Below, piece after piece: positions 15,338 through 59,102 of a DNA stretch of 64,000 nucleotides; positions within the stretch are counted from its first letter, which is position 1, and each line of letters opens with the position of its first letter. Under the pieces are notes generated by a model. The model was not told where the DNA came from. It worked only from the letters and a program-made list of their open reading frames with translations, and made no database searches. Origin of the DNA: Asterias rubens (lineage: Eukaryota); contig NC_047068.1 in assembly GCF_902459465.1 (NCBI RefSeq), forward strand, positions 5,828,001 through 5,892,000, written 5' to 3'. Position numbers and translations under genes: made by a program.

Positions 15338-15700
15338 TAAAGGAACACGATGCCTTGGATCGGCTGAGTTGCGTTTGTAAAAGTTTTTTATAAAATGCAT
15401 ATGATTAGAAAGATATTTTAAAAGTAGAATATAATGATCCACACAAGTTTTCCCTGAAATTGCGTGGTTTTCCTTACTTAGCAAACCAACATGGTCGGCC
15501 AGTTATGAGAGTAAACAATTTTACTCCAATAATGGCCGACCGTGTTAGCCTGAAGAGGTAACAGGAAAACCACGCAATTTCGAGTGATACTTGTGTGGAT
15601 CATTATATTATACTTTTAAAATATCTTTCTAATCATATGCATTTTATAACAAATGGTTGCAAATGTTACATGACCGCTTCAAGGCAATGTGTTCCTTTAA
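15338..15700. mobile_element. TTAA-type palindromic MITE family B
   Basis: aggaacacg(a/t)tgccttggatcgg ... ccaaggcaacgtgttcct|TTAA termini and an internal palindrome. A truncated copy lies at 29362-29535. Confidence 0.8.
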
Positions 15701-29100: not shown

Positions 29101-30149
29101 GTTTGCTACAGGAGGAAAATTATGGAAAAAGTTAATGATCTGTGCCAGTGAATTACAAAAGACTTAAAATCAACACGCTTCCAACTATTTACTTCACTTC
29201 AAAGCAAACTGAATCAAATGAGATTGATTTCTTCTTGTCCTTGCGTTCCATTTATTTTCTAATTCTGGAGGGTTGCTCCAGTTGGAGCTTATCAATTAAA
29301 TCTCATCAATCAAGATCCTCCCCCAAAAGTGTGTTCTTTTCTGTTTAAACTTTAATCAATATAAAGGAACACGTTGCCTTGGATCGGTCGAGTTGGTCTT
29401 GTGAAAAGCGTTTGTAACCGTTTGTTATAAAATGCATATTGTTAGAAAGAGGTTTTAAAAGTAGAATACAAAAATCCACACAAACATGCCTCGAAATTGC
29501 ACGGTTTTCCTTTTACCTCGTCGACTAACACGGTCAGTACTACCTAGTGTAGTACTAGTAGTCTAGGTAGTACTATCTAGTGTAGTACACTGTTTGATTG
29601 ACTTTGAAAACTTTAAGTTTCCCCTCATTTTTACATAAAGGGATATCTCATTCTCAGAAAATGAGGTAAATGAGTGATATATTATTTCATATCGAATGAA
29701 AAAGTGGTGGCGCCATACGGAAACTTTTCCGTGTACGTAGGGACTGTAGCCCACCTTGTTGAGCTGTAAATGGCTCCACTTTTAACATCGGTCTCATCAC
29801 TGTCGCCACTAGCGACAGTGATGAGACCGATGTTAAAAGCGAAGCCATTTACAGCTCGGCGACAGTGATGTCACCGATGTTAAAAGCGGAGGCATTTTAT
29901 TTACAGCTCAACAAGGTGGGCTAAACACAGTGTAGCCTGGGGGGTGTGTACGTCGTGTCGTGTACTGTAGTGAAAATGTAAACAACTCCCAAATTTGTTG
30001 CGTTTACTTTAGATAGATAGACTAGAGCATGGAGGAATAAATTAGAGTTTAGTCTTTACCTCTATTCCTGAACTGGTCTGGAAGGCTGTAAAGAGGAACA
30101 TAAACGAAAACCCCATCACAATCACGTTATACAGCATGACGTTCGCCAT
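20129..30149 (-). CDS. MFSD11: UNC93-like MFS protein MFSD11, 10 exons, ~443 aa
   Basis: Exons: 30149-30060 (MFLFTAFQT), 29105-28850, 28182-28021 ([12 protein letters not shown]...[14 protein letters not shown]), 27111-26985 (alternative donor at 26955 possible), 25699-25659, 23985-23920, 23052-22927 ([13 protein letters not shown]), 21936-21768 ([10 protein letters not shown]), 21203-21068 ([10 protein letters not shown]), 20287-20129 (stop). Phases are consistent; 1332 nt. Confidence 0.95.
20690..20940 (-). mobile_element. Degenerate SINE (MFSD11 intron 9)
   Basis: ggtacccattt...gtggagagcagcaat...taaagtgcattgctca...gaacccac resembles the reverse strand of a tRNA-SINE head and core. Confidence 0.5.
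21460..21735. mobile_element. MITE family A, truncated copy (a further partial copy at ~16108-16265)
   Basis: Internal family-A sequence (acttacttggtaacaagcaatggaga...gatacaccaagt...ctggtctttgacaat) without complete termini. Confidence 0.7.
22439..23533 (+). repeat. Two related tRNA-like SINE heads (22439-22520 and 23453-23533)
   Basis: Both read ctag(t/c)taccag(g/t)caat...gatgg(t/c)ct(g/a)gttggtaagac...ctagaat..., followed by a degenerate box B (gttcgaatc in the second copy). Confidence 0.5.
23548..23900. mobile_element. Dispersed repeat family E (related copies at ~14709-15119, ~33425-33880, ~58350-58860)
   Basis: Shared blocks gggaatcaatgtgtggtgaagaggttttcaactagtggttt (reverse complement at ~15075-15118) and cagtttmtcyaytcyrattggtsgaga. 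Confidence 0.6.
24152..24524. mobile_element. TTAA-flanked MITE family D
   Basis: TTAA|agccattatacactttcg ... cgaaagcgtataatggct|TTAA. Confidence 0.8.
26212..26340. repeat. 2 x 64-bp tandem duplication
   Basis: tcaacctaaacaaggtattaacataaacccttac... at 26212 and 26276. Confidence 0.9.
29747..29923. mobile_element. Second copy of the tagcccaccttgttgagct foldback MITE (MFSD11 intron 1)
   Basis: Same termini and internal palindrome as 53080-53341, with a partial duplication in the right arm. No TSD found. Confidence 0.85.
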
Positions 30150-37827: not shown

Positions 37828-40800
37828 ATGAAACCGAAAGCCAGATTACTTAAGCATCACCTCCTCATTTTGGGACTAGGAATAATGTTCCGATTCTTAA
37901 GAAGTTATTTCAATGAGATTGTAAAAGAAGGTGAAAACATCGGATGCATCGCCGTGTTTGGAATGTTTACTATAAACATGATCTGGAACGGTGTAATAAA
38001 GAGTCTGGCTGTGATGCTACCGACTCTACAGGAACAGTTCGGTGCTTCAACGTGGCTGGTTGGGTGGATGATAGCTTTAATAGACGGCACTTGTGACCTA
38101 GCAGGTACGTCGGCCTTGCCCTGCCGTCAAAAAAAGGGTCGGTCACACAATAATAATATTTATTTATTCGGGCAATCACATTTACAAGCACATGTACATA
38201 CATTAAACATATTTAAGAAAACAAAGTAAAACAACAGTGGGGTGCCCAGGAGAGCATAAAAGTAAAACAAAATATCGCCAAAAGGCGATGGAAAAGTTTC
38301 CGTATGGCGCCACCACTTTTTCATTCGGTATGAAATAATATAGTATCTAATATACCTCAAAGAGATATCCTTTTTGTAAAAATGAGGGGGAAAAGTGGTG
38401 GCGCCATACGGAAAGTTATCCTACAATGCTTATATGACACTGCAAAAATTTCTAAATATCTCTGGAACGCATTTGTCAATCACCCCCATTCCTTCACCGG
38501 TGTAAAAGTAAATCCGTGACCTAATTAGAAATGATTATTATCTGTTTAAGATTTTTCTTGTTCTTAAAATAACATGGCTAAAGTAGTCCCAGCCTATTTT
38601 CTAAACTATCCACCTGTGTAATAGTTAAAAAGCAGCTTTTCATAACTGAGAAGTCTCCCGAACACACAAACAATCTACTCCGCGGTAGTAGAGTAAAGAA
38701 AGACAGTTCTCTAAGAACCGCAAACCAAATATATAATATAAATAGCTCCCATCCAATGATGAGTTTTAGGCCTAAAACTTTCCTGATGACCAAACTGAAA
38801 CATCATTACGGGCTGTTCGTTTGATCTGACACATCATAATGTTTGATACCTTCCACAGCTCCGTTTGCACCAATATTAAGGGATGCGTTTGGAGTCAGAA
38901 TGGTCATCATGGTCAGCGGTGTGGCAATGTGTGCATCGCTTATCTGTTCAGCTTTTTCAACCAGTTTGTCAACAATGGCTGTCGTTCTGACAGTTATTGG
39001 AGGTGAGTTTTGTATTGAAACAAAAATCTGTCTTACAAAAATAGCACAGTAGTATATTTAGCTGGCATCGCTTCAAAGTGATGTACGGAGAACTAGTTTT
39101 AGCATGTAAAGCTTACGCTAAATTCTGTTTCGAAGGTTCAAGATATATTCAGGGGTTATCAGCAGTAATGTAGCAGTACTATGTAAGCGCCTTATACGGA
39201 GAGGATTACAGCGTGGCGTGTCGGTCATGGTCTAGCGGTTAAGACCACCGGATTTAAAAACTCCGGTGTGTCCGATCAGTAGAGTGTGGGCTCGAGTCCC
39301 AGTCGTGACACGTGTCGGATGATGACGTAGATCCGTTGGTCCCGTGTGTTGTAATGCAGGTAAAAGAACCCAGTGCACTTATTGAAAAGAGAAAATGTGG
39401 CCGGTGTTCCTGGTTTGATTGGCAGTATATTGCATTGCGCCACAACACCTTGTAAACCATTACATGTTGCTATGTAAAAGGAATAGGTCTCATACTTTAA
39501 ACGAAGTCCCACATACCTTGTATTGTTGACAAATACAGTATGTTAAAGCGCCTTGAGCGTCACCGGGTCCGGTGACGGATAAACGCACTAAATAAGAAGC
39601 CACTATTATTACTATCATTTATTGAGCCCAAATTTTGTGCCGTTAATGATAAGTCCAAGCATTTGATTAAATTTGACAGCAAAGTCTATTAAAGTCTGCA
39701 AAACGTACTTAAACATTATCTTAAACTTTATGGCAATTGTTTTATAGTTCTCTAACCAACACGGAACTCTTTTGCCCTCAGGACCCACACTTGGGATTGC
39801 CAGTATCATAACCAGGGATCTGATTGGTCGATGTTTCGACAAACACTACTCCACTGCGTTAGGCATAACTGGTGTAGGTGGCTCTTTGGGGTACATTATT
39901 TTTGCCCCTCTGACGCAATTCCTCTTGGACCTCTATGGTTGGAGAGCAACGATGATGCTACTTGGTGCACTGTTCTTCAATCTCACCGTGTGTGGCGCTC
40001 TAATGAAATCACGAGATGGAGGCTACAAGGCGGTCGACAATGGAAAACAGAGTGTTGTAGATGATCAAGATAACGGAGCAAGTCGACAAAGTCGATCATC
40101 TCATCGTACTTCCATTTGTAACTTAATCGCCATGAATCTACCTCTGGACTTATTCACATCAGTCCGTTACTGGCTTATAACATTCGCCTCTGTCATGTTT
40201 TTTTTCTGTATGTATGCGTGGTTGATCTACTTTGTACCACACGTCACTATGTCAAAGGGATTTTCGCCCACCGATGCTGCTAACTTCGTTTTAGTTTTTG
40301 GTGTTGGAAAGATGTTAGGGCATTTACTCGTTGGTCAAGCCGTTTCTGCTTGTGACAAGATTGGTCTAGATGCTAATGTGTGTATGTTGATATCACTTGG
40401 TGTGATGTCCACTTACTATTTCATTGATCCATGTTTGATAATTAGCTGGGCGATTTATGTCAGTGTATTCATTTATGGATGTTTCCATTCCTTCACGTAT
40501 ACACTGTTTGACGTCATCACAAAAGAAGCGATCGGAGCGGATCAGTTGGGAAGCGCCTTCGGATGGATTGCGTTCAAATGTGGTGCGATGAGATCTGCAT
40601 TGCTTTTCTTTCCAGGTAGGCGTTTTGTTGATGTTCATTATTTATGGCCTCAAAATAATATGGTGTTATTATCAGGTTTTTGAGCAGCATTGTTAAAGTT
40701 AAAGCGAGTCCTGTTTATCGTTTTCACTAAACCATTTTGTTTTGTCACTGTTTTGTTTTCCGTTCTAGGTTTGGTGTTTGATACACTCGGTAGCTACACC

Positions 40801-40899
40801 TTAGCATTCCTCATCATGGGTGGAATGAACTTACTGAGCTTCTTTGCACTGCTCTACCTGATGTGGTTAAAAAGACACCGTCTAGAAACTGGCATTTAA
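37828..40899 (+). CDS. Monocarboxylate transporter (SLC16/MCT-family MFS), 4 exons, ~461 aa
   Basis: Exons 37828-38104 (start could instead be ATG 37885), 38859-39002, 39782-40615 and 40769-40899, all joined by phase-1 GT-AG introns. MCT-like motifs: LPTLQEQFGASTWLVGW, FDKHYSTALGITGVGGSLG, LLDLYGWRATMMLLGALFFNLTVCGALMK, GLVFDTLGSYTLAF. Confidence 0.9.
38290..38421. mobile_element. Small MITE with ~30-bp TIR (truncated reverse copy at ~29600-29730)
   Basis: ggaaaagtttccgtatggcgccaccactttt and aaaagtggtggcgccatacggaaagttatcc. Confidence 0.75.
39213..39615 (+). mobile_element. tRNA-derived SINE, near full length (MCT intron 2)
   Basis: Box A-like tggtctagcgg, box B-like gctcgagtcc, conserved-type body (ccgttggtcccgtgtgttg...gtaaaagaacccagtgcactt), LINE-like tail aaagcgccttgagcg ending in (att)n-like repeats. 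Confidence 0.8.
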
Positions 40900-41153: not shown

Positions 41154-42134
41154 CTTTTACTTAGAGAATATTCAGATATAACTCGGCCGAATTTTCAAGA
41201 ACATCCCGTTAAACACAATGTCACGCACCATATTACCACCACGGGCCCACCAGTGAATGCACGTCCCCGACGATTGGCCTCAGACAAGTTACATATAGCC
41301 AAAGCAGAATTTAATCACATGCTTGACTTGGGAATAATCCGTCCCTCAAAAAGCCCATGGTCTTCACCTTTGCACATGGTACCTAAGAAAAATGGCGATT
41401 GGAGACCTTGCGGTGACTATCGTGCTTTATATAATGCCACAACACCTGATAGGTACCCGATTCCCCACATTCACGATTTTGCAGCAACCTTACATGACAA
41501 GAAGATTTTCAGTAAAGTTGACCTAGTCAAGGCTTACCACCAGATACCTGTTGAACCCGAAGATATACCAAAAACGGCAATAACTACACCTTTCGGCCTT
41601 TTTGAATATATAAGAATGCCATTCGGGTTAAGAAATGCTGCGCAAACATTTCAAAGATTTATCGATCAAGTATTACACGGCTCGGATTTCACCTATGCTT
41701 ATATTGACGATTTGTTGATTGCGAGTGAAAATGAGCAACAACATGAATATCATCTTAGACTACTTTTTGACCGCTTACGAGAATACGGGGTGGTAATCAA
41801 CCCTAGTAAATGCGAATTCAAAGTAACTAGTCTTGATTTCTTAGGCCACCATATTGACTGTCATGGTATCAAACCTTTGGAAAATAAGGTGAACTTAATC
41901 CAAGACTTTCCAGTACCAAATTCACTCCGCAAATTGAGAGAATTTCTGGGATTGATCAATTTTTATCGGCGTTTCATCCCACATTGCGCTGATATTTTGC
42001 AACCCTTGACTGACATGCTGTCTTGCAAGTCAAAAGACAAAGCGATTTCACTGACCGAATGTGAATTGGCATCTTTCCAAAGAGCAAAATCTACTCTAGC
42101 TGAAGCTACTATGTTAGTACACCCAGCTGTAGAC
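41154..42134 (+). mobile_element. Ty3/gypsy LTR-retrotransposon pol fragment: reverse transcriptase and connection
   Basis: Open frame with [75 protein letters not shown]. Homology stops at MLVHPAVD. No gag, protease or LTR seen upstream. Confidence 0.95.
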
Positions 42135-42375
42135 ACCAATACATGTGTACACTGCAGATTGAGGACATACTTTTCATACTAATTTACTATCCAATGGAGG
42201 ACATTGCCAAAAGTCGAATGGTACCTATCGATGTGAGGACATAACACATGAATCCTTTTTCTTGCGGTTCACTAATGTGAATGTGTATACTGGCCTTATA
42301 GGAAATGTTTTGGGGGTGGTACACGATTTTCTTGTTCTTTGGGGGGGGGGGGGGGGGGGGGGGCAGGCCAAAGGT

Positions 42376-43003
42376 CTAGACTAATCATTTGGCTGTGCCT
42401 ACAGAGTCACTCTAGGTTATGACTGTACTTTGGTGGTGCATGAGACCTTAAATTTGTTAAAGTGTCATCGTGTTTCTACAAAAGTCCTTAATGTTTTTCA
42501 AGTTCTGGTCTGCAATGCCACAGGACAGGACGATTCAATGTCACGTTTTCCTGGAATCTTCTTCAGCAAAATGAATCTCTGCAAGCCCTCGGTTACGTCT
42601 TTCTTTTCCTGGGCAGTCCAGGGGCGTCGCTTGAATTGTCGACGCTCGACTTGTCGAGCTTTTGGAGCTGGATCCGTTTGGGTTGGTGGCCTTCCTACAA
42701 CACACAGGAAAGAAGAGGTCAGTTAGTAAACATAATCAAATGGGGCGTATACATAACCTAAATATGTTCATTTTACCGGTGTCACATTAACTCCTCGAGT
42801 AAATCAATAAGCAATTTAGCACAAAAGAATGCGATAAAGGTACCTGCAGAAAATGCCTGACAAGAAGCAGCCATCTTGTTTCATCCTACCGTACAAAATG
42901 AGTTGCCCAGATGGGCTAATCTAGACTAATCACTTGGCTGTGCCTACAGAGTGACTCTAGGTTATGACTGTACTTTGATGGTGCATGACACCTTAAATTT
43001 GTT
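42376..43003. repeat. ~83-bp direct repeat pair bracketing the Myb-like exon
   Basis: tctagactaatca(t/c)ttggctgtgcctacagagt(c/g)actctaggttatgactgtacttt... at ~42376-42458 and ~42920-43003. Confidence 0.85.
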
Positions 43004-43209
43004 GACAGCAAACAGAGTCTGGCATGTTATCGCATTTTGGTCTAGGGGGGGGGGGGGTAAACAGGGAATAGGACCAGCATATGCAAGAGACCTACAAGAG
43101 ATATAGGCATTAAAAAATATTAAAAACTTACTGGCATCAACACTGTCCTCCAAAGCTGGGTCACACGAGTCACCTGAATCACTGCTGTCCTCATCGCTGG
43201 TGAAGCCTT
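42457..43209 (-). pseudogene. Two spliced 3' exons (acidic exon plus Myb/SANT-like terminal exon) of a truncated, element-type gene
   Basis: Exon 43209-43132 (EGFTSDEDSSDSGDSCD) and exon 42694-42457 (KRRPWTAQEKKDVTEGLQRFILLKKIPGKRDIE...ALQTRT), joined by a phase-1 GT-AG intron. Restoring one G at 42499 gives WKNIKDFCRN. I recall this motif from the C-termini of tyrosine-recombinase (Crypton-like) proteins of aquatic animals; this is unverified. Confidence 0.6.
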
Positions 43210-43650
43210 CTGCAATAAAAAGAAATTAAACTTCTACAGTTAGCTTTGATTGGTTTCTGGCACACAAATAACAATGTGGGCCAATCCGTTTGGTTGGGTG
43301 TGTGGGGTTTGGGGTGTACAGTGATTGATGTTCAAAGGGGGGGGGGGGAGGGGGGGTTAGGTGATGACGGCCACAGGCCGAGTTATCAGGCCCCAAAAAC
43401 AAAGAGCAATTGTTACATTTAGGTATGCTTGCTTTTTGGCGTACACACCTAAACATGTTGGCCAATCCATTGGGGGGGGGGGTGGAGAGGGGGGGGGGAG
43501 GTTGTACAGTGAATGAATGTTATTTGGGGGGGGGGGTACCACAGTTTGAATTAAATTGGAAAGACAAGTTAAAAATGGGTTTGTTTACCTCCAGGAACAT
43601 GCAACTCCTCCAAAGATTTGCCATGTTGCGAAACCATTTTTCATCTATAG

Positions 43651-44322
43651 GATGCATGGGAATTGGAAGATTCAGAAAAGCGTCTACAGAGAGCAGGACT
43701 TAGTCGCCTGGAGATACTAGAGAAGTCACATTTGGATGAATGCATCTGCAAGGGTGAATGGCTTGCATGTGCTGAAAATGTATTACTTAACAATGATTTG
43801 TGCAATAAGAGTTTTTCTAAAGCAGTAACAACTCTCCTGGACGAGGGTAGGGGAAAATATCGTAACATCATGATTACTGGGCCAGCAAATTGTGGGAAAA
43901 CATTTCTTTTAAATCCATTAAATAAAATATACAATGTATTTACCAACCCAGCAACAACAACATTTGCTTGGGTTGGTGCTGAGCAATCTGAAATCATATT
44001 CCTGAATGACTTTCGGTGGACCTCGCAAATAATACCTTGGCAAGACTTGCTATTATTACTAGAAGGTCAACTCGTCCACCTCCCCGCCCCAAAATCGCAT
44101 TTTGCACAAGATTTAATTTTAAATAAGGACACCCCTATTTTTTGCACTCGCAAAAATCCAATAGTTCTTGTCAAGGGTGGCTCTGTGGATGAAAGGGAAA
44201 CAGAAATGATGGCCGTGTGCTGGAAAATATTGCCATTTCACCACCAGATTCCTGAAGATGAACAGAAGTGTGTACCACCTTGTACGCGATGCTTTGCATC
44301 ACTAATCTTAAATAAGGAATAG
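43651..44322 (+). CDS. Superfamily-3 helicase, parvovirus NS1 / CRESS-Rep-like C-terminal half (possibly inactive)
   Basis: Walker A GPANCGKT (43879-43902), Walker B-like IIFLND (43993-44010), motif-C-like TPIFCT and a C-terminal CxxC (PCTRCF). The frame opens at 43651, after an in-frame TAG that also forms an acceptor-like tttttcatctatag. No HUH nuclease domain is visible upstream. Confidence 0.8.
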   Translation, partial: DAWELEDSEKRLQRAGLSRLEILEKSHLDECICKGEWLACAENVLLNNDLCNKSFSKAVTTLLDEGRGKYRNIMITGPANCGKTFLLNPLNKIYNVFTNPATTTFAWVGAEQSEIIFLNDFRWTSQIIPWQDLLLLLEGQLVHLPAPKSHFAQDLILNKDTPIFCTRKNPIVLVKGGSVDERETEMMAVCWKILPFHHQIPEDEQKCVPPCTRCFASLILNKE

Positions 44323-44455
44323 TTTGAAACAGTCTCATATAGGTCTATATAAAGGATTTTGATAGAAAAATTTGATGCCCGTTCTGCATTTGCCCCCCCC
44401 CCCCAATCCATGATCACAGCCTAAACTGTTCTAAGTGCCCATTTTCAAAGTACGT

Positions 44456-44824
44456 TCAAGGAACACGTTGCCTTGGATCGGTCGAGTTGGTCTTTGAAAA
44501 GCGTTTGTTATAAAATGTATATAGGTAGAAAGATGCTGTAAAAGTAGAATACAATGATCCACACAAACATGCCTCGAAATTGTACGGTTTTCCGTTTTAC
44601 ACAGTCGGCCATGTATGGGAGTCAAATTTGTTGACTCCCATAAATGGCCGACCGTGTTAGTTCGCACAGTAAAAGGAAAACCACGCTATTTCGAGGCAAA
44701 CTTGTGTGGATCATTGTATTCTACTTTTTACACATCTTTCCAACCATATGCATTTTATAACAAACGGTTAAAAACGCTTTTTTATATACCAACTCGTCCG
44801 ATCCAAGGCAACGTGTTCCTTTAA
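44456..44824. mobile_element. MITE family B copy, just downstream of the SF3 helicase stop
   Basis: aggaacacgttgccttggatcggtcgagttgg ... ccaactcgtccgatccaaggcaacgtgttcct|TTAA. Confidence 0.85.
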
Positions 44825-45659
44825 AACCAACGTGTGAAATGTTCCCAAAGACTTGGTGCTTTTTAGAGAGTACAGCACAATGAAGTGGTTGATATTATAC
44901 AATTTGGCACATAATTGTCAGAAATACACAAAAGTTCTCACTATCTGTTTATTATTATTATTATTATTATTATTTATTTGGCAATTCACATACAAATACA
45001 AAAATATAAATACAATAGAAATACATTACGAACTACCTGGGAAGTTAACTGTAATAAAGTTTCACAAGTATGCAGACTGATTTTCACCGTTTCATTTTTG
45101 TACCATTCCAAAGTAGAAATAATAGTCTGGTTCCTTTTTATGGTGAGTGATTTTTTATCATCAATGTCATTGGGTATACTGGGAACCAGACCAAGATAGC
45201 CACAGTGTAATATAGGTCTATAGTTTTGTATTATATCAACATGTTAACAGACAATTAATGATAGGATTTAGGACTTTTATACAAGTTATTGTCATGGTGG
45301 TCTTAAATTAAAAAGGGTTTTAACTTTATGAATGAGTACCAGTGTGAAATTGTCACTTTTTTATTTAATGTTAACTATGTACGCTGAACAATAGGTGTGC
45401 TTTGTCAATGTAAATCCATCACTATAAATACCTTCAGAACTACAGGGCAAGTTGATTTTTAGTCAGTGTCACAAGTATGCAGACTTGTTTGATAGACTCT
45501 GTATCCCCTGCACCCCCCCCCCCCCCATTACAATGTTGTGGCTCCCGCGCAGTCTCACTTTTGCGCACTCGGCCCTCTACAACATTGAAGGGGGGGGGGT
45601 ATCAGCTTTTGCATAATGTCGTAGAAAAACTTCAGGTCGCATCCACCCACCTACCCACA

Positions 45660-48600
45660 ATACGTTGTGTGGTATTCGGTGGGTAAAAGCCGGAACTATC
45701 ATTTTATGTTTTACTACGACGCTTAGGGAATCAACATAGATTGTACACCCATACGTTGTGCGTTATGCGGTGGGTAAAATCCGGAACGATGGCAGTTTTC
45801 TGTTTTACTACGGTGCTTAGGGTATCAACACCACATGGTAGTAGTTTCAGAGTAGATCGTAGGCATATACATACACACTGCGCCATTTGTGTTTAATATT
45901 TCAATATTGGCAACAACAACAAAAGCATCAAATGTAATTCACGCATTATACAATCTACAGAATTGAGACACAATGCTAAAGATACTCAGTTAATTGTTAC
46001 TAACATGTTTACTAACTGGGACAGCCAGTGTTGATGTTCATTTTTTTATCAAGTTTTTGCACAATATTATTCAGAACTCAATTTGTACAGGTTTAACATT
46101 CATCCGTTTAATAAGCCAGGGCCTAATCTAATATTATTATAGACCCTCGTCCATTGTTTGGAAGTCGAGGTCTCCATGCCCTGCGTCCATAGCTTTGATA
46201 GTACATGGTATGGGGGGGGGGGGGGGGTGCAAGAATATATGATTTGAGGGTTAATTTTTACCCCAACAAATGTTTGCAATAATTGTATTACATCAAGAAG
46301 AATGTGGCTAAAGAACTGAAGCTTGTAAATACTTATTGAACTATTTTGAGCGCTTTCAGTTCGGCTTCGCATCTTAATGTGGTTAGGGTGGGCTGTCGTA
46401 GCAACGTCCGGCAAGTCGTCTGTCACATTAAATGACTATTTTCAATTAATGTCAAGTTCAATTCATTCAATCATTTCAAATTTACAGAAATATTACATCA
46501 CAGGAGAACAACCACAATTAAGTTGAGGTTATAAAAACAATTTTTTTTCCACTGTCACCATTATGGTCATAATTGTTTGCAATATTATGAAGTTTTACAT
46601 TTTATTCGGCAGCTTTTTTTCTATGTGAGTTATAACAGCCTATTTATTATATAAAATATTACGTATAGTGGGGTCCAATCAACATGTATGTCTACAAGTT
46701 GTGTATAAATGCGAAGGTCGGTAAACCAGGTCGGAACTCTCATTAATTTCTGCAGTGTAGTGAAGTAACGTCATGTGTAAATAAATTCAGTAGATTTTTG
46801 GTGGCAATTGAAACAATCCCTGTTTTATGTTATCTACACAATTTTTTTTCGGGGATGTTTTCCAGTAAATCAAGCTCTGGTTAGAACTGAAGAAGTTTAT
46901 ACAATTTGAGTTAAAACCTAAATTCGCGCGTGCAGTCGTCGTCTACTAACTTCAAAATAGGTTCTCGTGAAAAAATAAATTGAGGGTAAAATTTGTAACG
47001 ATCAATTACAGATTTTCTTGTCAGTAAAACAACGATACTAACGGAATTGACTCACGAGTTATTCAGTGTTCAGCAGATTATACTCGATGTAATAAGTGCC
47101 TTAAACTACCGGGTAAAATTCCGAACGATCTCAGTTTCATTCTGCTGTTTTTCTGCACGACGCTTGTCACACACACACCATACGTTGTGTGGTATTCGGT
47201 GGGTAAAAGCCGGAACTATCATTTTATGTTTTACTACGACGCTTAGGAAATCCACGAAGATTGTACACCCATACGTTGTGCGTTATGCGGTGGGTAAAAT
47301 CCGGAACGATGGCAGTTTTCTGCTTTACTACGATGCTTAGGATATCAACACGTCATGGTTGTAGAGTAGATCGTATAGGCCTGTACATACACTGCGCCAT
47401 TCGCGTTGTTGTTGTAAATTATTATTTACATAGATTTTGACAATTTATTTTTAGTTTGAACACACCTATTCTGTAGATGTCAAAGCTGAATTTGTACAGG
47501 TTTAACATTCATCCGTTTAATAAGCCAGGGCCTAATCTAATATCATATTATAGACTAGACCCTCGTCCATTGTTTGGAAGTCGAGGTCTCCATGCCCCGC
47601 GTCCATAGCTTTGATAGTACATGGTATGGGGGGGGGGGTTCCAAGAAAATATGATTTGAGGGTTAATTATCACAACAAAAAATGTTACCAGTAATTGTAT
47701 TATATCAAGAAGATTATTTGAACTTTTCGAGGAATTTATATATTGTTCAAAATTATCGGCCCTGGTGGTATTCAAACTGCCACCGAGGGCGCTGTTGAAA
47801 AACGAATTCGCTCATTTTGAGGGTTTCCTTCCAGCCAGTTTTAACAAGTATTAATGTGGCTAAAGAACTGAAGCTTGTAATACTTATTAAACTATTAACA
47901 AGTCATGGTTGTAGAGTAAATCGTATAGGCCTGTACAAACACTGCGCCATTCGCGTTGTTGTTGTAAATTATTATTTACATAGATTTTGACAATTTATTT
48001 TTAGTTTGAACACACCTATTCTGTAGATGTCAAAGCTGAATTTGTACAGGTTTAACATTCATCCGTTTAATAACCCATACGTTGTGCGTTATGCGGTGGG
48101 TAAAATCCGGAACGATGGCAGTTTTCTGTTTTACTACGGTGCTTAGAGTGTCAACACCGCATGGTAGTAGTTTTTAGAGTAGATCGTAGGCCTATACATA
48201 CACCGCGCCATTTGTGGATAAAGGTCGGGACAACCAGTGTTGTTGTAAATTATTATTTACATAGATTTTGACAATTTATTTTTAGTTTGAACACACCTAT
48301 TCTGTAGATGTCAAAGCTGAATTTGTACAGGTTTAACATTCATCCGTTTAATAACCCATACGTTGTGCGTTATGCGGTGGGTAAAATCCGGAACGATGGC
48401 AGTTTTCTGTTTTACTACGGTGCTTAGAGTGTCAACACCGCATGGTAGTAGTTTTTAGAGTTCGTAGGCCTATACATACACCGCGCCATTTGTGGATAAA
48501 GGTCGGGACAACCAGTGTTGTTGTAAATTATTATTTACATAGATTTTGACAATTTATTTTTAGTTTTAACACACCTATTCTGTAGATGTCAAAGCTGAAT

Positions 48601-52900: not shown

Positions 52901-53690
52901 TCAGGATTCTATTAAAGTATTACCCCAAGAAAGTGCATCGTAAAAATAAGGGTTGATGTACATAACCAAATTCATTGATACATACTGGGGAAAACAAATC
53001 AAATTAATTTTAAGCTTAGAAATAATACAAATGTTTATAGAAACGGCTGTGGATGCATTGATATGTTTATAGGCTAGGCTAGCCCACCTTGTTGAGCTGT
53101 TAAATGGCTCCGCTTTTAACATCGGTCTCATCACTGTCAGCTTTTAACATCGGTCTCATCACTGTCAGCTTTTAACATCGGTCTCATCACTGTCAGCTTT
53201 AAACATCGGTCTCATCACTGTCAGCTTTTAACATCGGTCTCATCACTGTCAGCTTTTAACATCGGTCTCATCACTGTCACCATTACAGTGATGAGACCGA
53301 TGTTAAAAGCGGAGCCATTAATAGCTCAACAAGGTGGGCTAAGGCTAGGCTGCCCTGAATGACGGTTTAACCTTGAAATCCTGAATTATTTTAAAACATT
53401 TGTTGTCATAAACCGAACAAAATCGTTTGAAAGATTATTTAAACAAACTGCCATCGTTCCGGCTTTTACCCACCAAATATAACGAACAACGTACGGTGTG
53501 TACAATTTGTAGATCCCTAAAGCACCGTAGTAAAACAGAAAACTGCTATCGTTCCGGATTTTACCCACCGAATACCGCACAATGTATGGGGTGTACAATC
53601 TCCATGTAGATTCCCTAAGCCTCGTAGTAAAACAGAAATGATAGTTCCGGCTTTTACCCACCGAATACCGCACAGTACAACGTATGGCCG
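49990..53690 (-). repeat. Reverse-complement copies of the same composite module
   Basis: 49990-51190 mirrors 46080-47130, 51300-51545 mirrors the subunit block, degenerate pieces run to ~52200, and three more subunits lie at 53440-53690. Confidence 0.85.
53080..53341. mobile_element. Short foldback MITE with 6 x 28-bp tandem expansion of the left arm
   Basis: TIR tagcccaccttgttgagct; 9-bp TSD aggctaggc (53071-53079 and 53342-53350); unit gcttttaacatcggtctcatcactgtca at 53112-53279. Confidence 0.9.
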
Positions 53691-53833
53691 TGTGTGTACG
53701 ATCCCCCCCCCCCCGATACAGAAAACCAGAATGCTTTATGTCTGTGCGTGTGGCGTGTCCGTGGGGAATCCCCCAGCGCACGCAATGAAATTGAACCGCC
53801 ATCATTTTAAATCAGAATTCCTACTAATAAAAG

Positions 53834-54020: not shown

Positions 54021-57000
54021 ATGGCGTGTAGTGCTATGCCTAACCTGGATCCATTTGTGTTTGACCCGCAGAGTGATGAGCCCACCGCTCTCAGTTCCAA
54101 ATGGGATAAATGGCTGAAACGTTTTGAAAGAGCTATGGTCGGTTATAACATTAATGGAGCAAAAAGAAAGCGGGCATTGCTATTGCATTACGGAGGTGAG
54201 CAACTTGAGACTGTTTTTGATACACTTTCTGACACAGGAGATGAGAATGATTATGAGAAGGCAATAGAAGCTTTGACGGCTCACTTCGTTCCAAACCCCC
54301 TCCATGAAACTATCATCTTCTTCAGGAGTTTGAAACAGAACCCGGAGGAAAACGTTGATCAGTTTTGTACTCGTCTCCGAAATGCAGCAGAAAAGTGTGA
54401 GTTTGGTGATCTGAATCGCCAACTGATCATACAATTCAGTATAGGATGCTCTTCAATAGAACTTCGGCGTGAAGCACTTGACAATATTCTTGTCGAGAAG
54501 GCGTGCAATCTACCACAGCTGTTAGACTTCACACAGTCCCTTGAATTGTCAAACAAACAAGCCGATGCCGTTCAAAACCAAACCGACATTCAGCAAAACC
54601 CTGACAAACTTTCTCAGAGTCAGACTCAACACATCGGTGACAAACCTACCCGTCATGAGAGCAAAGACCAAGGAGTTCTCTATGATGAGAGCAGACATAA
54701 GCCATTGTACGACAGTACCAAGAATAGACCTACACAGCAAAACGGAAATAGTGCAACTCCGGTAAGCTAAACCATTAACTTGTATGCCCCGCCGGTGTCC
54801 GATGCAATTGTATCCGCCATGCAGAACTGTCCGCTCCGGACACTTTTGCACATGCAATCGTGTCCGGGGCTATGCAAAAATCGTCCGGCGGACATGTACA
54901 TGACGGTACATGTATGTGCGTGCATAAGCGAGCGTGCATGCACTAAACATACGTATATCACGTAATGATTGCACCGAATACCCAACGGCCGAACATTTCC
55001 CGTGTCATTCATGACATTATACACTTAGCTTGAAAAACAAACAAATGGCCAACGTGTTCCGTCGATCAAGGGCCTTTAATTTGCTGCAAGGACGGTCTTG
55101 CAGGGGGAGGACACAACTGCATATGCAAATGTGTCCGGGCGGACACAATTGCATTATGCAGCGGCGTCCGGGCGGACACGGTTGCATACGCAATAATGTC
55201 TTCCGGATAGTATTGCAAATAGGACATCATTGGAGTTCGGGGATTACAGTGTTGTCCAGAAACGCCGGGCCGGTGATTTCGCCAGCTACTTGGTCCTTTT
55301 GATTTCGCCCCCCAGTTTTTGCCGCCTCCAATTTAATTTTCCCCAGTTAAAATTACTGTCAACGACTGGAATTTTTCAAAAATGAAAACGCCGTATTAGA
55401 CACAGACATAGCACGAACCATTCTGGCATCCTGTCATCGCACCTGGCGTCACTGCAACACCTTCTCCATTGTACATTGTTTTTATTTTAAACATTATAGC
55501 CAAGGACTGCAAATAGAGTATTTGCTGCTCCGACGGGGCAACCCCCACCCAACTGTAGCAATTGTATACATGGTTGACAAAAGAATTAGTAACAGTTTAC
55601 AAGGGTAAATGGTAAAAATAACATTTGAAATTGGTCAAGGTTTAGTGTTGTACACAATCAGTCAGGTGGTATAGGAATATGCTACAAAATAAAATTTACT
55701 CAGTTTATTTTAACGTAAAATACGGTAATTATCCTTAATAATAATTATAATAATAATACTAATAATAATAATCATAATTTATTCATTTGTATTGTGCCCA
55801 ATCCCATCAAATAATACCCAATCAACCCACAAACGGCTCATCAGAGAGAAAGATTTCCAACTCTGAACAAGAAAAAGATGAAAGTTCAAAGAAAACCAAG
55901 GCTAGTGATAAAACAAGCAGAGCGGGCTCCCTGGGTGCAGTAAGTGATTTTACATAAGTGTATGCGAGTTTCCAAAGTAAAGCTTTATTATAAAGCCCTA
56001 TAGCTAGAGCGCTACGTTCATCCGGTAGTCGCAGGTTCGAGTCCCTCTCTCCTATCAATTTGTTCAATCAAAATTAATTTTCAAATTTACCCAGTCTTCA
56101 TTTCTTATCTGATAACAGGTTTCAGTGTCAACCTCCAAACAATTGTTGCATAAAAACGGCCAATCAAAGAAAGCAAAGTTCAATCCTGAACTGGAAAAAG
56201 AGATATTGCAGAGTTACGAGGAATTTAAAGACAGAAGCTACATGGCTACGGTACGTAATTTTTTTTTTAGTTGCTTATAACGAAAGTTATATGTGAACTG
56301 CATAACAATTATTGCACATCAGTCATACAGCAACAATTTTCCAATGAAATCTGATAAATTTCTTGCCTAACGCTAACAAACACGGGAGTTTTTTACAGAA
56401 ACGAAACCGTTAATGCTACTCTCACATAGGGAGAACGCTACTGAATGTGCTTACGAACGGAAATATTTAACAATCGCTCAAACTTCGCAACATTCGCCAC
56501 AAATTCACCACGCTCACAAGTCATTCTCCACCTCCTTACGAAGATCGGTCACTTTATGCTGCTCTCACACGGCGAATATGCTAGCGAATATGCTATCGGA
56601 AGGACATATTTGACAATCGCTCAAACTTCGCAGCATTCGCCGTGTCTTCGTAAGCGTTGGTAACAAATTCGGAACGCACAAAAATTATTCCCCACCTCCT
56701 AACGAAGATCGCTCAATTTACAATCCGGTTTGTTAATTTCAGCAAATGTTGCGAAGATGGTCATTCGGCTTGATTTTCGTTAGCATTGGTAACGTTGGTA
56801 AAGCGTGCATAAGCGTTTGAAACGTTCGTGAAGGCATTGACAAGCGTTGGTAAGCATTTGTAAACATTCGTAAGATATTGGTAAGGAGTGGGCCAACCGA
56901 AGACGATCGAGGGGTGAGACCGATATGAAAATATTCACTATCCAACCGCCATTTTGGACGAATTCTACGCGCAGTTCAAATATTCATGTTCGCAAGAACA

Positions 57001-59102
57001 TTCGCCACTCTGTGAGAGGGGCAATACGAAGCGCCTCCGTACACTCAGCGAATGTTGTGAAGACGGTAATTCGCCATCGATTTGCGTAAGCATTTGGTAA
57101 GCCATTGGTGGTACTGTTGGTAAAGCGTGCGTATTATGCGTAAGATATTGGGAAGGAGAGGTTTAAGGACGACAGAGAACATTCACTATCAAATCGCAAC
57201 TTTTGGGCGAATTCATCGCGAATTTCAAACATTCGTATTCGCAAGATATTCGCCCAAGTGTGAGAGTATAGCTTAAAGGAACACGTTGCCTTGGATCGGT
57301 TGAGTTGGTCTTTGAAAAGCATTTCAACCGTTTGTCATAAAATGCATATGATTAGATAGACACGTTAAAAGTAGTATATAATGATCCCCACCAGTATCAC
57401 TCGAAATTGCGTGGTTTTCCTTTGACCTCGTCGACTAACACGGTCGGCCGTTTAAACTTGACTCCCATAAGTGGCCGACCGTGTTAGTTCGTATAGGAAA
57501 ACCACGCAATTTTGAGGCAATATTGTGTGGATCATTGTATTCTACTTTTAAAACGTCTTACTAACCATATGCATTTTCTAACTAAACGGTTACAAACGCT
57601 TCTTAAAGACCAACTCGACCGACCCAAAGTAACGTGTTCCTTTAAGAACGGATACATAATACCAATAAGCTCTTACTTGATTTCTCATTTCAATAATTTT
57701 CAGGCAATTAATATCAGGAGAAACAGCGCAAATTTGGCTGATTTTACACCGTTACAACTGTCAGATAAAATTCGTCGTTTAGTGAATAATAAAAAAGGTA
57801 AGATAATACTAAAAAGTAAAAGGAGAAATTTATATAAATTTCAAGGGCCAAACGGGGGAAAAATTGAAAAAGAATAATGGAATAAACAAAAATAACAGTT
57901 CTTAATAATATGGGGTTATTCGTTTAATAAAATATGCATCCTTAGTAATTTTAAAAGTGTTCTATTGTGTTCTTTTTTACAGATCAGAAGAAGACTTCAA
58001 GGTATTTGCGATACATTTTATTACATGATTCATTAAAAAAGTTAAGTGTAATACCAACAACCATCAGCCATACAGACAGTGAAATGATTAATGTAAAAAT
58101 TATAAAGAAAACACCAATTATTCTCCGAAACCTGAAATGTTGCACCGAGGGGATTCGGAGAGGTTATTTGGAATGACGGAAAACAATTATAAAACAATTA
58201 ATTTTTTAATTGTTCGCTGAATTAAACAAAATGAATGAACTATAATAATTGATTTAACATACGTTATGTTTGTATTCATCTCCCTTTCCCTCAAGAACTC
58301 GACGTGCTAGCCGCAAGATATCCGATGATGAGTAAGTATAAGAAAAAGGGACTAAAAGGGTTTTGACGAGTTCTTAAACTGCCTTAAAAACCGGCAGGGT
58401 CGTGGCCGTGCGATAGGCCCTTGCCTTCGGCTCGGGCCTTTGTCGCACTGCCACTATCCTGCAAGGTTTTTAACGGCAGTTTAAGAACGAGTCACTACTC
58501 TATTATTCCCATTCATAATATGCCCTTTTGGTTACAAGGCGTTATAGTAAGAAACTCTGTAAAACTGATCTGTTTTCCTTGAGCTCTGTACGTGTGTTGC
58601 ATTTTTATGACTGACAGTTTTTGGATATGCATTCGTGCGCGTAGTACATGCATCTAATGTAACCGGTTATAAACAGCTCCAGCTGGTAATAATCAATCGT
58701 TTTAACATCACACGTGACGCGCTCTCCAGCAATAGGAAAGGCAAAACTATTTGAGGTATTTAAGAATGGTAAGTTATAATCCTTTGTTTGTTATTCATAA
58801 ATACCCGGGCAGTTTATCCATTCCAATTGGTCGAGAGGGTATCACGTGGGGTTGTTTATCGCACGACCAGGTCCCTGCCACATAATTTATTTTGGATCCG
58901 AAAATGATGCGGGTGTTTGAGGGGGCTGGGTCTACACAGGTGCGCCGAGTTAATATGGAAAGCCGGGAAACAATATATGAAACAGTTTCCAACTTTGATT
59001 CACAGTATTCACTGAAATCAAAATAACAATCTAAATTGATTTAACTTATTTTCATTTCTCGTTTTTAAGGCTCGAGTTTATCCGCGAGCAATGCAATGAT
59101 GA
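54021..59102 (+). CDS. Candidate spliced gene whose first exon is a Ty3/gypsy Gag capsid domain (3' end not found in window)
   Basis: Exon 54021-54761 (WDKWLKRFE, RKRALLLHYGG, FRSLKQNPEENVDQFCTRLRNAAEKCEFG) ends at CCG|GTAAGC. Phase-compatible GT-AG exons follow at 56119-56250, 57983-58001, 58296-58331 and 59070-59102, with a possible extra exon at 55847-55939. Unspliced, the ORF stops at 54770. The Gag identity is high confidence; the splicing is predicted. Confidence 0.7.
54787..55273. repeat. GC-rich imperfect foldback built from gtccgg/ccggac short repeats
   Basis: Repeated tgtccggg...ggaca motifs in opposite orientation on the two sides; begins directly after the gag exon. Confidence 0.45.
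56411..57272. mobile_element. MITE-like element with internal repeats
   Basis: Imperfect TIR gctactctcaca / tgtgagagtatagc; internal duplicated block acaatcgctcaaacttcgcarcattcgcc. Confidence 0.55.
57273..57645. mobile_element. MITE family B copy
   Basis: TTAA at 57273 and 57642-57645; family B termini. Confidence 0.85.

What the first reader, a model, noticed from the sequence alone, without database searches (positions are those of the whole stretch)
43651..44322. Endogenous NS1/Rep-like SF3 helicase with an acceptor-like 5' boundary
Seen: Walker A GPANCGKT, Walker B-like IIFLND, motif-C-like TPIFCT and a terminal CxxC in a 224-codon open frame. Known: SF3 helicases are typical of small DNA viruses (parvovirus NS1, CRESS Rep) and virus-like elements, not of ordinary animal genes. 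The frame starts exactly at tttttcatctatag|GAT, so the missing N-terminal (expected HUH) half may be a separate exon or may be lost. At the expected arginine-finger position the codon is TGC (44218, MMAVCW), one CpG-type transition from CGC, suggesting inactivation (inference).
Basis: partly seen in the sequence, partly recalled or inferred. Interest (0 to 1): 0.8.

Follow-up and report, generated by a model that had tools for sequence, protein, structure and literature searches.

The report
Truncated Rep helicase exon, starfish
This is the surviving second exon (helicase half) of a virus-like replication-initiator gene carried by mobile DNA in sea stars. The first exon, which holds the DNA-nicking half, has been lost from this copy, but the fragment leads to a large, apparently undescribed family of transposons that carry such a gene.

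Summary
Window 43651-44322 (+) is a 223-codon open frame with Walker A, Walker B, motif C and a C-terminal CxxC, preceded by TAG and a polypyrimidine-AG.

It is exon 2 of a two-exon gene for a Rep-like protein: HUH nuclease, linker, oligomerisation bundle and SF3 helicase. The Asterias amurensis copy (437 aa) is 99% identical over the whole frame. It has exon 1 (HUH motifs I-III) 548 bp upstream and uses the same acceptor. Acanthaster and at least six other loci share this phase-0 intron.

In the window, homology to the intron stops 15 bp upstream of the acceptor. There it abuts a 1.5-kb fragment of a tyrosine-recombinase element, and exon 1 is nowhere in the 64 kb. The retained exon has no stops or frameshifts. 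It does depart from the family at a column that is Arg in 77 of 79 relatives and aligns with the Arg in AAV2 Rep40. So this copy is most likely a recently truncated, inactive remnant.

The family is large (1,815 clusters). Its members usually sit inside 3.7-4.0-kb Tc1/mariner-like transposons with terminal inverted repeats. No capsid gene was seen in 80 loci, and pattern scans of viral contigs found no relative. The fold is closest to AAV Rep and parvovirus NS1.

The parts
43651..44322 (+). Retained exon 2 of a Rep-like gene, one part from first base to last, stop codon included. It holds a 4-helix oligomerisation-type bundle (about residues 2-65, nt 43654-43845) and an SF3 AAA+ helicase core: Walker A 43879-43902, Walker B 43993-44010, motif C 44131-44148, C-terminal CxxC 44281-44292. 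The gene is broken once, by loss of everything upstream of the last 15 bp of its intron. There are 0 stops and 0 frameshifts in the retained exon, and 2 amino-acid differences from the A. amurensis copy.
43636..43650 (+). The last 15 bp of the ancestral intron (polypyrimidine tract plus AG acceptor). Homology to the A. amurensis intron begins at 43636.
42134..43635 (-). A 1.5-kb 3'-terminal fragment of a 6-kb repeated unit ('B') whose intact copies in A. amurensis encode a 608-aa tyrosine-recombinase-like ORF on the minus strand. Only about the last 25 codons of that ORF remain here. The fragment starts at the 8-bp core ACCAATAC (42135-42142) and abuts the Rep intron remnant.
44323..45663 (+). 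Downstream tail of the 4.3-kb 'Rep unit', collinear with A. amurensis (4.7-5.3% mismatches). It contains a MITE (44455-44824) inserted at the same site in both species. The unit ends at 45656 and is followed by the core variant ACAATAC (45657-45663).
41253..42182 (+). Neighbour: a truncated reverse-transcriptase ORF (RVT_1, E 2.8e-34) cut off where the B fragment starts.
39772..40899 (+). Neighbour: the terminal exon region of an MFS-type transporter host gene (MFS_1, E 5e-21).

Best explanation
Window 43651-44322 is the second and last exon of a two-exon gene for a Rep-type replication initiator. The intact protein is about 437 aa. It has an N-terminal HUH nicking domain with one catalytic Tyr (motifs I-III), a basic linker, a helical oligomerisation bundle and a C-terminal SF3 helicase. 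That layout is the same as AAV Rep68.

In this copy a single rearrangement removed exon 1 and all but 15 bp of the intron. It joined the acceptor to an internal point of a tyrosine-recombinase (Crypton-like) element. What remains corresponds to a Rep40/Rep52-like helicase-only unit. It has no upstream exon and no initiator ATG before the oligomerisation bundle (the first in-frame Met lies 4 residues before Walker A). It also lacks the family's near-invariant Arg at the arginine-finger column. I therefore read it as a young, inactive remnant. Its open frame is intact simply because it has accumulated very few substitutions.

In intact family members I infer the following, none of it shown. The HUH domain nicks an origin and attaches covalently through the motif-III Tyr. 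The SF3 hexamer unwinds the DNA. A separate integrase moves the element in and out of chromosomes: a Tc1/mariner DDE transposase in most animals, and possibly a tyrosine recombinase in Asterias. The element would then be an integrating replicon.

Shown: domain content, motif conservation, exon structure, the truncation, gene linkage, TIRs and the core repeats. Inferred: every catalytic or mobility step, and the inactivity of this copy.
For: Identity of the gene. The protein is 99% identical to A. amurensis XP_071809517.1/XP_071809592.1 (437 aa), which carries HUH motifs I-III. That gene has exon 1 at L087 10001-10642, a 548-bp intron running ...AAG|GTATGT to ...tctatag|GAT, and exon 2 at 11191-11862. 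Acanthaster planci XP_022110093.1 has an intron at the same position and phase. L021 and L029 have the HUH+linker ORF 777 and 681 bp upstream, ending at GT. Eight loci share polypyrimidine-AG at the same codon. About 46 of 218 cluster representatives start at this boundary.

Truncation. tblastn and profile searches find no HUH or linker piece anywhere in the 64 kb. Window 43636-45663 is collinear with L087/L088 11176-13376. Window 42134-43636 matches the first 1.5 kb of unit B, L087 13406-14906.

Fold. The exon-2 model has pLDDT 95.4 and its top PDB match is AAV2 Rep68/40 (E 3e-8, TM 0.66), followed by E1 and B19V NS1. The full-length model has pLDDT 94 and its top match is full-length AAV2 Rep68 (E 2e-12). 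The profile hits a Rep (9pqq, 0.002), AAV Rep40 (0.003) and SIRV1 ORF119 (0.008). Pfam REP_ORF2-G2P matches 23 of 38 full-length members, Parvo_NS1 and PPV_E1_C 9 each, and Gemini_AL1 4.

Arg column. It is Arg in 77 of 79 relatives and aligns with the Arg of '...qdRmfkf...' in AAV2 Rep40.

Age and constraint. Exon 2 differs from A. amurensis at 8 of 669 nt (6 synonymous, 2 non-synonymous; dS 0.043, dN/dS 0.09). Flanks show 4-5% mismatches.

Family context. A DDE_3 + HTH_Tnp_Tc3_2 transposase lies convergent to Rep, 350-1100 bp downstream, in about 38 loci. TIRs bracket the gene pair in 5 loci.
Against: The retained exon is fully open, and the acceptor AG and polypyrimidine tract are intact. 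A public annotation calls a 221-aa product here. dN/dS over the whole path to the A. amurensis copy is low (0.09). On the window's own branch the counts are too few to show relaxed constraint (2 synonymous, 1 non-synonymous, and 1 of each unresolved). Expression and splicing could not be examined. One other relative also has a non-Arg residue of the same kind at the Arg column, so that change alone does not prove inactivity. The assumption that the A. amurensis arrangement is ancestral rests on only two species plus Acanthaster.
Confidence: 0.8

Rival explanations
1. The fragment is a functional, host-retained helicase-only gene (Rep40/Rep52-like). It would be transcribed from a new upstream exon or promoter and kept either as a helicase or as a dominant-negative or piRNA-generating defence against active copies.
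For: The frame is open and the acceptor is intact. dN/dS is 0.09 against the sister-species copy. An annotated 221-aa product exists. Published work reports transcribed, piRNA-targeted helicase-only NS1-like elements in A. rubens (PMC6085071, PMC7737747).
Against: Only 15 bp of intron remain, so the usual branch-point region has been replaced by unrelated DNA. There is no in-frame ATG before the oligomerisation bundle. The near-invariant Arg is not kept. With only about 4-5 substitutions on this branch, an intact frame is expected even without selection. The published starfish parvo-like NS1 is only 13% identical, so it belongs to another family.
Confidence: 0.1
2. It is an ordinary endogenous viral element: a fossil of a parvovirus/densovirus or CRESS-DNA virus infection that integrated into the germ line.
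For: The structural neighbours are overwhelmingly Parvoviridae NS1 and AAV Rep. HUH + SF3 is the Rep architecture of ssDNA viruses. Densoviruses are common in sea stars (PMC7737747).
Against: No capsid-like ORF family recurs in the 80 related loci; the only recurrent neighbour is a Tc1/mariner transposase. TIRs enclose Rep plus transposase. Two pattern scans of IMG/VR viral contigs found no relative. Sequence identity to parvoviral NS1 models is 13-21%, and the window protein is below the Parvo_NS1 threshold. Part of the family carries a spliceosomal intron.
Confidence: 0.07
3. The juxtaposition at 43636 is an assembly artefact in a repeat-rich region, and the real locus holds a complete two-exon gene.
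For: The region is dense with repeats: the B unit, a MITE and an RT fragment.
Against: Both sides of the junction are single-copy within the window and show similar mismatch divergence (4.0-5.3%) from A. amurensis. The record is a 21.9-Mb chromosome-scale contig.
Confidence: 0.03

Closest known systems
AAV2 Rep68/Rep40 and parvovirus NS1 (Parvoviridae)
   Same: The domain order is the same: HUH nuclease, helical oligomerisation bundle, SF3 helicase. These are the best structural matches for both the exon-2 model and the full-length model. The conserved Arg aligns with the Arg in AAV2 Rep40, which I recall to be the arginine finger, R444 (alignment; the residue's role is from memory). The window fragment corresponds in extent to the helicase-only Rep40/Rep52.
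   Different: Sequence identity is 12-21%, and the window protein is below the Pfam Parvo_NS1 threshold. There is no VP/capsid gene nearby. The partner gene is a DDE transposase. Motifs I and II look more gemini/genomovirus-like than parvoviral (motif I reads ...YLITYS...; Pfam Gemini_AL1 and REP_ORF2-G2P hits). Terminal hairpins were not tested.
CRESS-DNA virus Rep (e.g. Vientovirus Rep 9pqq; geminivirus Rep)
   Same: A single-Tyr HUH domain fused to an SF3 helicase. This is the best PDB sequence-profile hit (9pqq, E 0.002). From my own knowledge, some CRESS Reps (mastreviruses, genomoviruses) are also spliced between the nuclease and the helicase.
   Different: The linker plus oligomerisation region is much longer, about 130 aa. 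No small circular genome or capsid gene was seen, and the copies are integrated and bounded by TIRs.
Geminivirus-like Rep + transposase transposon of Tuber melanosporum, and the 'parvovirus-like' repeats of lower animals, including Repbase DENSOV_HM (Liu et al. 2011, PMC3198968)
   Same: A virus-type Rep gene sits inside a TIR-bounded DNA transposon next to a transposase gene, and is multiplied within the genome. DENSOV_HM from Hydra carries a PPV_E1_C-type helicase, as some members here do.
   Different: The hosts differ (a fungus there, marine animals here). Here the transposase is Tc1/mariner-type and convergent with Rep. I could not compare sequences with the Tuber element or DENSOV_HM, so whether either is the same family is untested.
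Helitrons and Replitrons (eukaryotic HUH transposons)
   Same: Eukaryotic mobile elements that encode a Rep-class HUH nuclease.
   Different: Helitron RepHel has two catalytic Tyr and an SF1B helicase, and Replitron transposases have no helicase (PMC10288648). Here there is one Tyr motif, an SF3 helicase and a separate DDE transposase.
Cryptons (tyrosine-recombinase DNA transposons). This applies to the neighbouring B unit.
   Same: A single large ORF with a C-terminal tyrosine-recombinase-like region. The unit is bounded by a short direct repeat (ACCAATAC), as expected for integration through a circular intermediate.
   Different: The Pfam Phage_integrase match is below threshold (E 7e-5, 23 bits against 27.1). 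There is no PDB sequence hit. No comparison with named Crypton families was possible.

Membership tests
SF3 helicase (AAA+) | Walker A P-loop (GxxxxGK[T/S]) | tested here: met
   GPANCGKT is present. In the family G is 99%, K 99% and T/S 99%.
SF3 helicase (AAA+) | Walker B acidic residue after a hydrophobic strand | tested here: met
   IIFLND is present, and D is 97% conserved.
SF3 helicase (AAA+) | Motif C strand | tested here: inconclusive
   The strand P-I-F-(A/C)-T is conserved (94/76/91/93/95%) and aligns with AAV '...PvivTSN'. I did not establish a conserved Asn in the aligned column.
SF3 helicase (AAA+) | Arginine finger | tested here: not met
   The family has Arg in 77 of 79 sequences, aligned with the Arg in AAV2 Rep40. 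The window copy does not have Arg. This feature is met by the family but not by this copy.
SF3 helicase (AAA+) | Fold: helical oligomerisation bundle plus AAA+ core matching solved SF3 helicases | tested here: met
   pLDDT 95.4. The model matches AAV2 Rep68/40, E1 and B19V NS1 at E 3e-8 to 1e-6 and TM 0.6-0.7.
Rep-class HUH endonuclease | Motifs I, II (H-u-H) and III (Y-x-x-K) N-terminal to the helicase | tested here: not met
   The motifs are present and conserved in full-length relatives, including the 99%-identical A. amurensis protein. They are absent from the window in any frame.
Parvoviridae NS1 (Pfam Parvo_NS1, PF01057) | Score above the Pfam gathering threshold | tested here: not met
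   The window protein scores 12.7 bits against a cut-off of 20. Nine of 38 full-length relatives match at E<=0.01.
Parvovirus / CRESS-DNA virus genome | Linked capsid gene; viral (episomal or encapsidated) genome | tested here: not met
   No recurrent capsid-like ORF appears in 80 loci. Pattern-based scans found no relative in IMG/VR, though their sensitivity is limited.
Tc1/mariner transposon (wider family, not the window copy) | HTH + DDE transposase | tested here: met
   DDE_3 reaches E 1e-14, and both it and HTH_Tnp_Tc3_2 pass their thresholds in several of the 7 proteins tested. The gene is present in about 38 loci and absent from the window and from the A. amurensis loci.
Tc1/mariner transposon (wider family, not the window copy) | Terminal inverted repeats enclosing the genes; TA target-site duplication | tested here: inconclusive
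   TIRs of 20-32 nt enclose Rep plus transposase in L011, L014, L027, L032 and L049. 'TA' precedes the outer repeat in L011 and L049. Each element was seen at one site only, so the duplication is not proven.
Crypton-like tyrosine-recombinase element (neighbour B) | Tyrosine-recombinase catalytic domain | tested here: inconclusive
   Phage_integrase E 7.3e-5, 23 bits, below the 27.1 cut-off. No PDB hit.
Crypton-like tyrosine-recombinase element (neighbour B) | Short direct repeat at both ends, with the unit found in different contexts | tested here: met
   ACCAATAC (or a one-base variant of it) sits at both ends of B and of the Rep unit in every arrangement examined. The outside contexts differ: satellite, RT fragment, or the other unit.
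Helitron | Two-Tyr Rep fused to an SF1B (Pif1-like) helicase | tested here: not met
   The helicase is SF3 by profile and by fold. There is a single Y-x-x-K motif.

The most novel reading that the evidence does not exclude
The window fragment is the tip of an undescribed class of animal mobile elements that are integrating replicons. A parvovirus/CRESS-like Rep (HUH + SF3) would replicate an excised copy. An interchangeable integrase would insert it: a Tc1/mariner DDE transposase in cnidarians and many other marine animals, and a Crypton-like tyrosine recombinase acting on an 8-bp core in Asterias. In Asterias the 4.3-kb Rep unit and the 6-kb recombinase unit would form one element of about 10.3 kb with a circular intermediate. 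That would explain why the two units appear in the order Rep-B in A. amurensis L087 and B-Rep in the window.
Probability: 0.3. Interest if true: 0.8.

Novelty: new variant of a known kind. Interest (0 to 1): 0.55.

Why it matters
The locus itself is a dead fragment, so its direct importance is small.

Its value lies in what it points to. There is a very large protein family (1,815 clusters at 50% identity) that is annotated almost everywhere as 'hypothetical'. This family couples a virus-type replication initiator to a cut-and-paste transposase inside one TIR-bounded element.

That coupling bears on a long-standing question: how ssDNA viruses, plasmids and transposons exchange replication and integration modules. 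One fungal precedent exists (Liu et al. 2011). The family also shows that SF3 helicase genes in animal genomes are not always infection fossils.

For sea-star virology there is a practical point. 'NS1-like' helicase hits in transcriptomes and metagenomes may come from this resident family rather than from densoviruses.

Tried and rejected
- **Single-sequence Pfam and PDB searches** gave only P-loop-level hits. Profiles were needed.
- **A second family profile against the PDB.** A profile built from the 80-sequence alignment A4 gave no PDB hit, because insertions inflated it to 734 positions. I rely on the A2 profile.
- **Search for exon 1 in the window.** tblastn with 12 long relatives and an unfiltered HMM search of all frames found nothing better than E 0.3. 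A weak P-loop-like hit near 55.5 kb (E 0.07-1.5) was treated as chance.
- **Viral contigs.** Two scans found nothing.
- **The palindrome just after the stop codon as a Rep origin.** It is a multi-copy MITE with four copies in the window, so I rejected that idea.
- **A LINE-type 5'-truncated insertion or a 3' transduction as the cause of the B/intron junction.** The order of the segments does not fit either. An internal deletion within a B + Rep-unit composite fits better.
- **The recombinase unit as a general partner of Rep.** It is absent within 10 kb in Acanthaster and from all metagenome loci.
- **The conserved antisense ORFs over Rep (clusters 0 and 2)** are by-products of Rep conservation.
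- **Literature.** Seven searches found no description of a Rep + Tc1/mariner element. The eighth attempt was rejected on term format and did not run. This is negative evidence from an incomplete library.
- **No consensus, repaired or joined sequence was made.** The profile HMMs built in /scratch were used only to search.
Full report
**1. The observation**

Window 43651-44322 (+) translates to 223 codons plus a stop. It is preceded directly by TAG. The last two bases of that TAG are the AG of 'ccatttttcatctatag'.

The window comes from NCBI assembly GCA_902459465.3, record LR699098.1, a 21.9-Mb contig. From memory this is the Asterias rubens reference assembly. That fits the result below, where the closest relative is an A. 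amurensis gene with 4-5% neutral divergence.

**2. What the protein is**

On its own the protein gives only sub-threshold Pfam hits: AAA_28 0.019, RNA_helicase 0.058, Parvo_NS1 0.064. Against the PDB it gives only P-loop-level matches.

It belongs to a very large family. One collection holds 652 homologues, with animal sources such as Actinostola, Exaiptasia and Apostichopus. The other holds 1,815 clusters at 50% identity.

Full-length members are about 430-500 aa, with the helicase at the C-terminus. An alignment of 38 of them (A2) shows the three Rep motifs at the N-terminus: motif I '...YLITYS...', motif II H-Y-H followed by hydrophobic residues, and motif III Y-x-x-K. These are followed by a basic linker and the helicase.

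A profile of A2 hits the following in the PDB:
- a 'Replication-associated protein' (9pqq, later identified as Vientovirus Rep), E 0.002
- AAV2 Rep40/68, E 0.003
- the HUH protein SIRV1 ORF119, E 0.008
- papillomavirus E1

Pfam matches among the 38 members are REP_ORF2-G2P in 23, Parvo_NS1 and PPV_E1_C in 9 each, and Gemini_AL1 in 4.

An AlphaFold model of the window protein is very confident (pLDDT 95.4, pTM 0.91). It consists of a four-helix bundle followed by an AAA+ core. Its best PDB matches are AAV2 Rep68/Rep40, papillomavirus E1 and B19V NS1 (E 3e-8 to 1e-6, TM about 0.65). Its best viral-model matches are parvovirus and densovirus NS1 at 13-21% identity.

The full-length sister-species protein also models well (pLDDT 94). 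It matches full-length AAV2 Rep68 over about 500 columns (E 2e-12), and also SV40 large T antigen and Vientovirus Rep.

Neither is the case.

**3. The 5' boundary is a real splice acceptor**

All long relatives align to the window only from 43654 onwards, which corresponds to their residues ~132-170.

Among 80 related loci fetched from metagenomes, about 35 encode HUH, linker and helicase in one uninterrupted ORF. A subset has a helicase-only frame.

In L021 and L029 the HUH+linker ORF lies 777 and 681 bp upstream. The linker profile ends complete, and the helicase profile starts at its first positions.

All eight such loci (window, L002, L007, L008, L021, L029, L030, L034) have a polypyrimidine tract and AG immediately before the codon that precedes the conserved A-W-(E/D)-(L/M). 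The upstream ORFs of L021 and L029 end at ...AAG|gtacgc and ...ACG|gtaata. This is a shared phase-0 intron.

The window protein's cluster at 90% identity contains XP_071809517.1/XP_071809592.1 of Asterias amurensis (437 aa). The next cluster contains XP_022110093.1 of Acanthaster planci (447 aa), and another contains a 438-aa Holothuria protein.

The A. amurensis protein is 99% identical to the window frame over all 223 residues and has HUH motifs I-III. Its gene has exon 1 at L087 10001-10642, a 548-bp intron (AAG|GTATGT ... tcttctatag|GAT) and exon 2 at 11191-11862. Acanthaster has the same structure.

About 46 of 218 cluster representatives, at 37-75% identity, begin at this boundary. The intron is therefore widespread in part of the family. 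It is not a sign of domestication, because L021 carries both the intron and the transposase.

**4. Exon 1 is gone from this locus**

Neither tblastn nor an unfiltered profile search of every frame finds any HUH or linker piece in the 64 kb.

DNA comparison with A. amurensis gives this picture:
- Window 43636-45663 is collinear with L087/L088 11176-13376. This covers the last 15 bp of the intron, exon 2 and a 1.3-kb tail.
- The DNA immediately upstream, 42134-43636, matches L087 13406-14906.

The independent scaffolds L089 and L090 are at least 99.5% identical to the A. amurensis locus. They also match the window only from 43636 rightwards.

So the Rep gene here is broken once, by loss of everything upstream of the last 15 bp of its intron. 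The retained exon has no stops and no frameshifts.

**5. State of the retained exon**

Against the A. amurensis exon there are 8 differences in 669 nt: 6 synonymous and 2 non-synonymous. This gives dS 0.043, dN 0.0038 and dN/dS 0.09. The flanks differ by 4.0-5.3% mismatches. Synonymous sites therefore behave like neutral flank DNA, and the protein was constrained along most of the combined path.

On the window's own branch the counts are too small to distinguish relaxed from maintained constraint (2 synonymous, 1 non-synonymous, 1 of each unresolved). With so few changes, an intact frame is expected even for a pseudogene.

One of the two amino-acid differences falls at the column that is Arg in 77 of 79 relatives. 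That column aligns with the Arg of AAV2 Rep40, which I recall to be its arginine finger.

The first in-frame Met lies four residues before Walker A. No ATG-initiated product could therefore include the oligomerisation bundle.

I conclude that this is a young, inactive remnant (confidence 0.8). Expression could not be tested.

**6. What replaced exon 1**

Window 42134-43635 is the 3' 1.5 kb of a 6.0-kb repeated unit, 'B' (L087 13403-19402). Three copies at 98.5-99.7% identity lie within 42 kb in A. amurensis.

B encodes a 608-aa minus-strand ORF with a sub-threshold Phage_integrase match (E 7e-5). It has no PDB sequence hit.

The junction sequences show that both B and the 4.3-kb 'Rep unit' (L087 9053-13376) are bounded by the same 8-bp core, ACCAATAC (variant ACAATAC). 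The arrangements are:

| Locus | Order of units |
|---|---|
| L087 | satellite, core, Rep unit, core, B, core-like, satellite |
| L088 | satellite, core, B, core, Rep unit, core, B |
| L089 | B end, core, Rep-unit start |
| Window | RT fragment, core (42135-42142), B positions 1-1500, junction at 43636, Rep unit from 15 bp before exon 2 to its end (45656), core variant (45657-45663), other DNA |

The simplest reading is a B + Rep-unit composite that suffered one internal deletion of about 6.6 kb.

A short direct repeat at both ends, seen in different outside contexts, is what site-specific integration through a circle would leave (Crypton-like). Whether the Rep unit is mobilised by the B recombinase is an inference. 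No recombinase lies within 10 kb of the Acanthaster gene or in the metagenome loci.

**7. The wider family**

The only recurrent neighbour of Rep is a 360-400-aa ORF. It lies 350-1100 bp downstream on the opposite strand in about 38 loci. It is a Tc1/mariner-type transposase: DDE_3 reaches E 1e-14, and both it and HTH_Tnp_Tc3_2 pass their thresholds in several of the 7 proteins tested.

Inverted repeats of 20-32 nt enclose the pair in five loci:
- L011, 1031-4998
- L049, 804-4577
- L027, 2093-6009
- L032, 166-4102
- L014, 2-3821

The elements are therefore 3.7-4.0 kb. They share an inner motif, and 'TA' precedes the outer repeat in two of them.

No capsid-like family recurs. Neither the window nor the A. 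amurensis loci keep any transposase remnant.

**8. Comparison with what is known**

Transcribed, piRNA-targeted 'parvo/denso-like' NS1 helicase-only elements have been reported in A. rubens (PMC6085071, PMC7737747). [quoted passage not shown] That is a different family.

Liu et al. 2011 (PMC3198968) described three relevant cases:
- a geminivirus-like Rep + transposase + TIR transposon in Tuber melanosporum
- parvovirus-like repeats in acorn worm
- Repbase's DENSOV_HM in Hydra

So the kind of element, a virus-type Rep inside a DNA transposon, is already known. I found no description of the animal Rep + Tc1/mariner element or of the association with a recombinase core. The library is incomplete and Repbase could not be searched. 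For that reason I rate the finding 'new variant of a known kind' rather than categorically new.

Noticed in passing
L011:1031-4998; L049:804-4577; L027:2093-6009; L032:166-4102; L014:2-3821 (related loci): Full-length relatives of the window protein lie inside 3.7-4.0-kb TIR-bounded elements together with a convergent Tc1/mariner-type transposase (HTH_Tnp_Tc3_2 + DDE_3). The pairing is seen in about 38 of 80 loci. I found no published description.
   Followed up: yes
window 42135-42142 and 45657-45663; L087 ~9045-9061, ~13395-13414, ~19400-19416; L088 ~3053-3062, ~9046-9053, ~13369-13376: An 8-bp core, ACCAATAC (variant ACAATAC), bounds both the 4.3-kb Rep unit and the 6-kb tyrosine-recombinase unit B in every arrangement seen. 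The order of the two units differs between loci (Rep-B and B-Rep-B in A. amurensis, B-Rep in the window). This suggests site-specific insertion through a circular intermediate.
   Followed up: partly
window 44455-44824, 15338-15700, 29362-29535, 57269-57645: A palindromic MITE of about 370 bp (ends ...AAAGGAACACGTTGCCTTGGATCGG...) has four copies in the window. The copy after the Rep stop codon is at the same site in A. amurensis (L087 12019-12403).
   Followed up: partly
window 41253-42182 (+): A truncated reverse-transcriptase ORF (RVT_1, E 2.8e-34) ends where the B fragment begins. It is a retroelement remnant between the MFS gene and the Rep fragment.
   Followed up: partly
window 54021-54770 (+): A 249-aa ATG-initiated ORF that looks to me like a retrotransposon Gag-type protein. 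It was not tested. A public annotation starts a 360-aa gene here.
   Followed up: no
L014:2063-2192; L019:3163-3564; L032:1913-2312; L040:4691-5160: Inverted repeats and arrays of about 10-bp iterons lie between the convergent Rep and transposase genes in several elements. They are candidates for a Rep-binding origin.
   Followed up: no
L004:2045-2341, L005:1802-2098, L006:1691-1987: A 98-aa ORF follows Rep by 24 bp on three contigs that carry the identical Rep (P0129). Its function is unknown, and in this lineage the transposase is on the same strand as Rep.
   Followed up: no
L021:2499-2677: A 74-nt-arm inverted repeat (84% complementary) lies inside the Rep intron of this relative.
   Followed up: no
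window ~45700-48000 and ~53386-53805: Satellite-like repeated units give recurring short ORFs (motif ...RWVK(S/A)GT...). The right end of the Rep unit abuts one of them. In A. amurensis the Rep and B units are likewise embedded in a 1-kb satellite.
   Followed up: no
window 43340-43360 and 43470-43540: Long G-rich runs lie inside the B fragment. The A. amurensis copies show related low-complexity Gly/Pro-rich frames.
   Followed up: no
L034:145-294 and 2625-3284; L052:189-308 and 2639-3285: Two helicase pieces about 2.4 kb apart on the same strand in two related contigs, which suggests tandem or nested copies.
   Followed up: no
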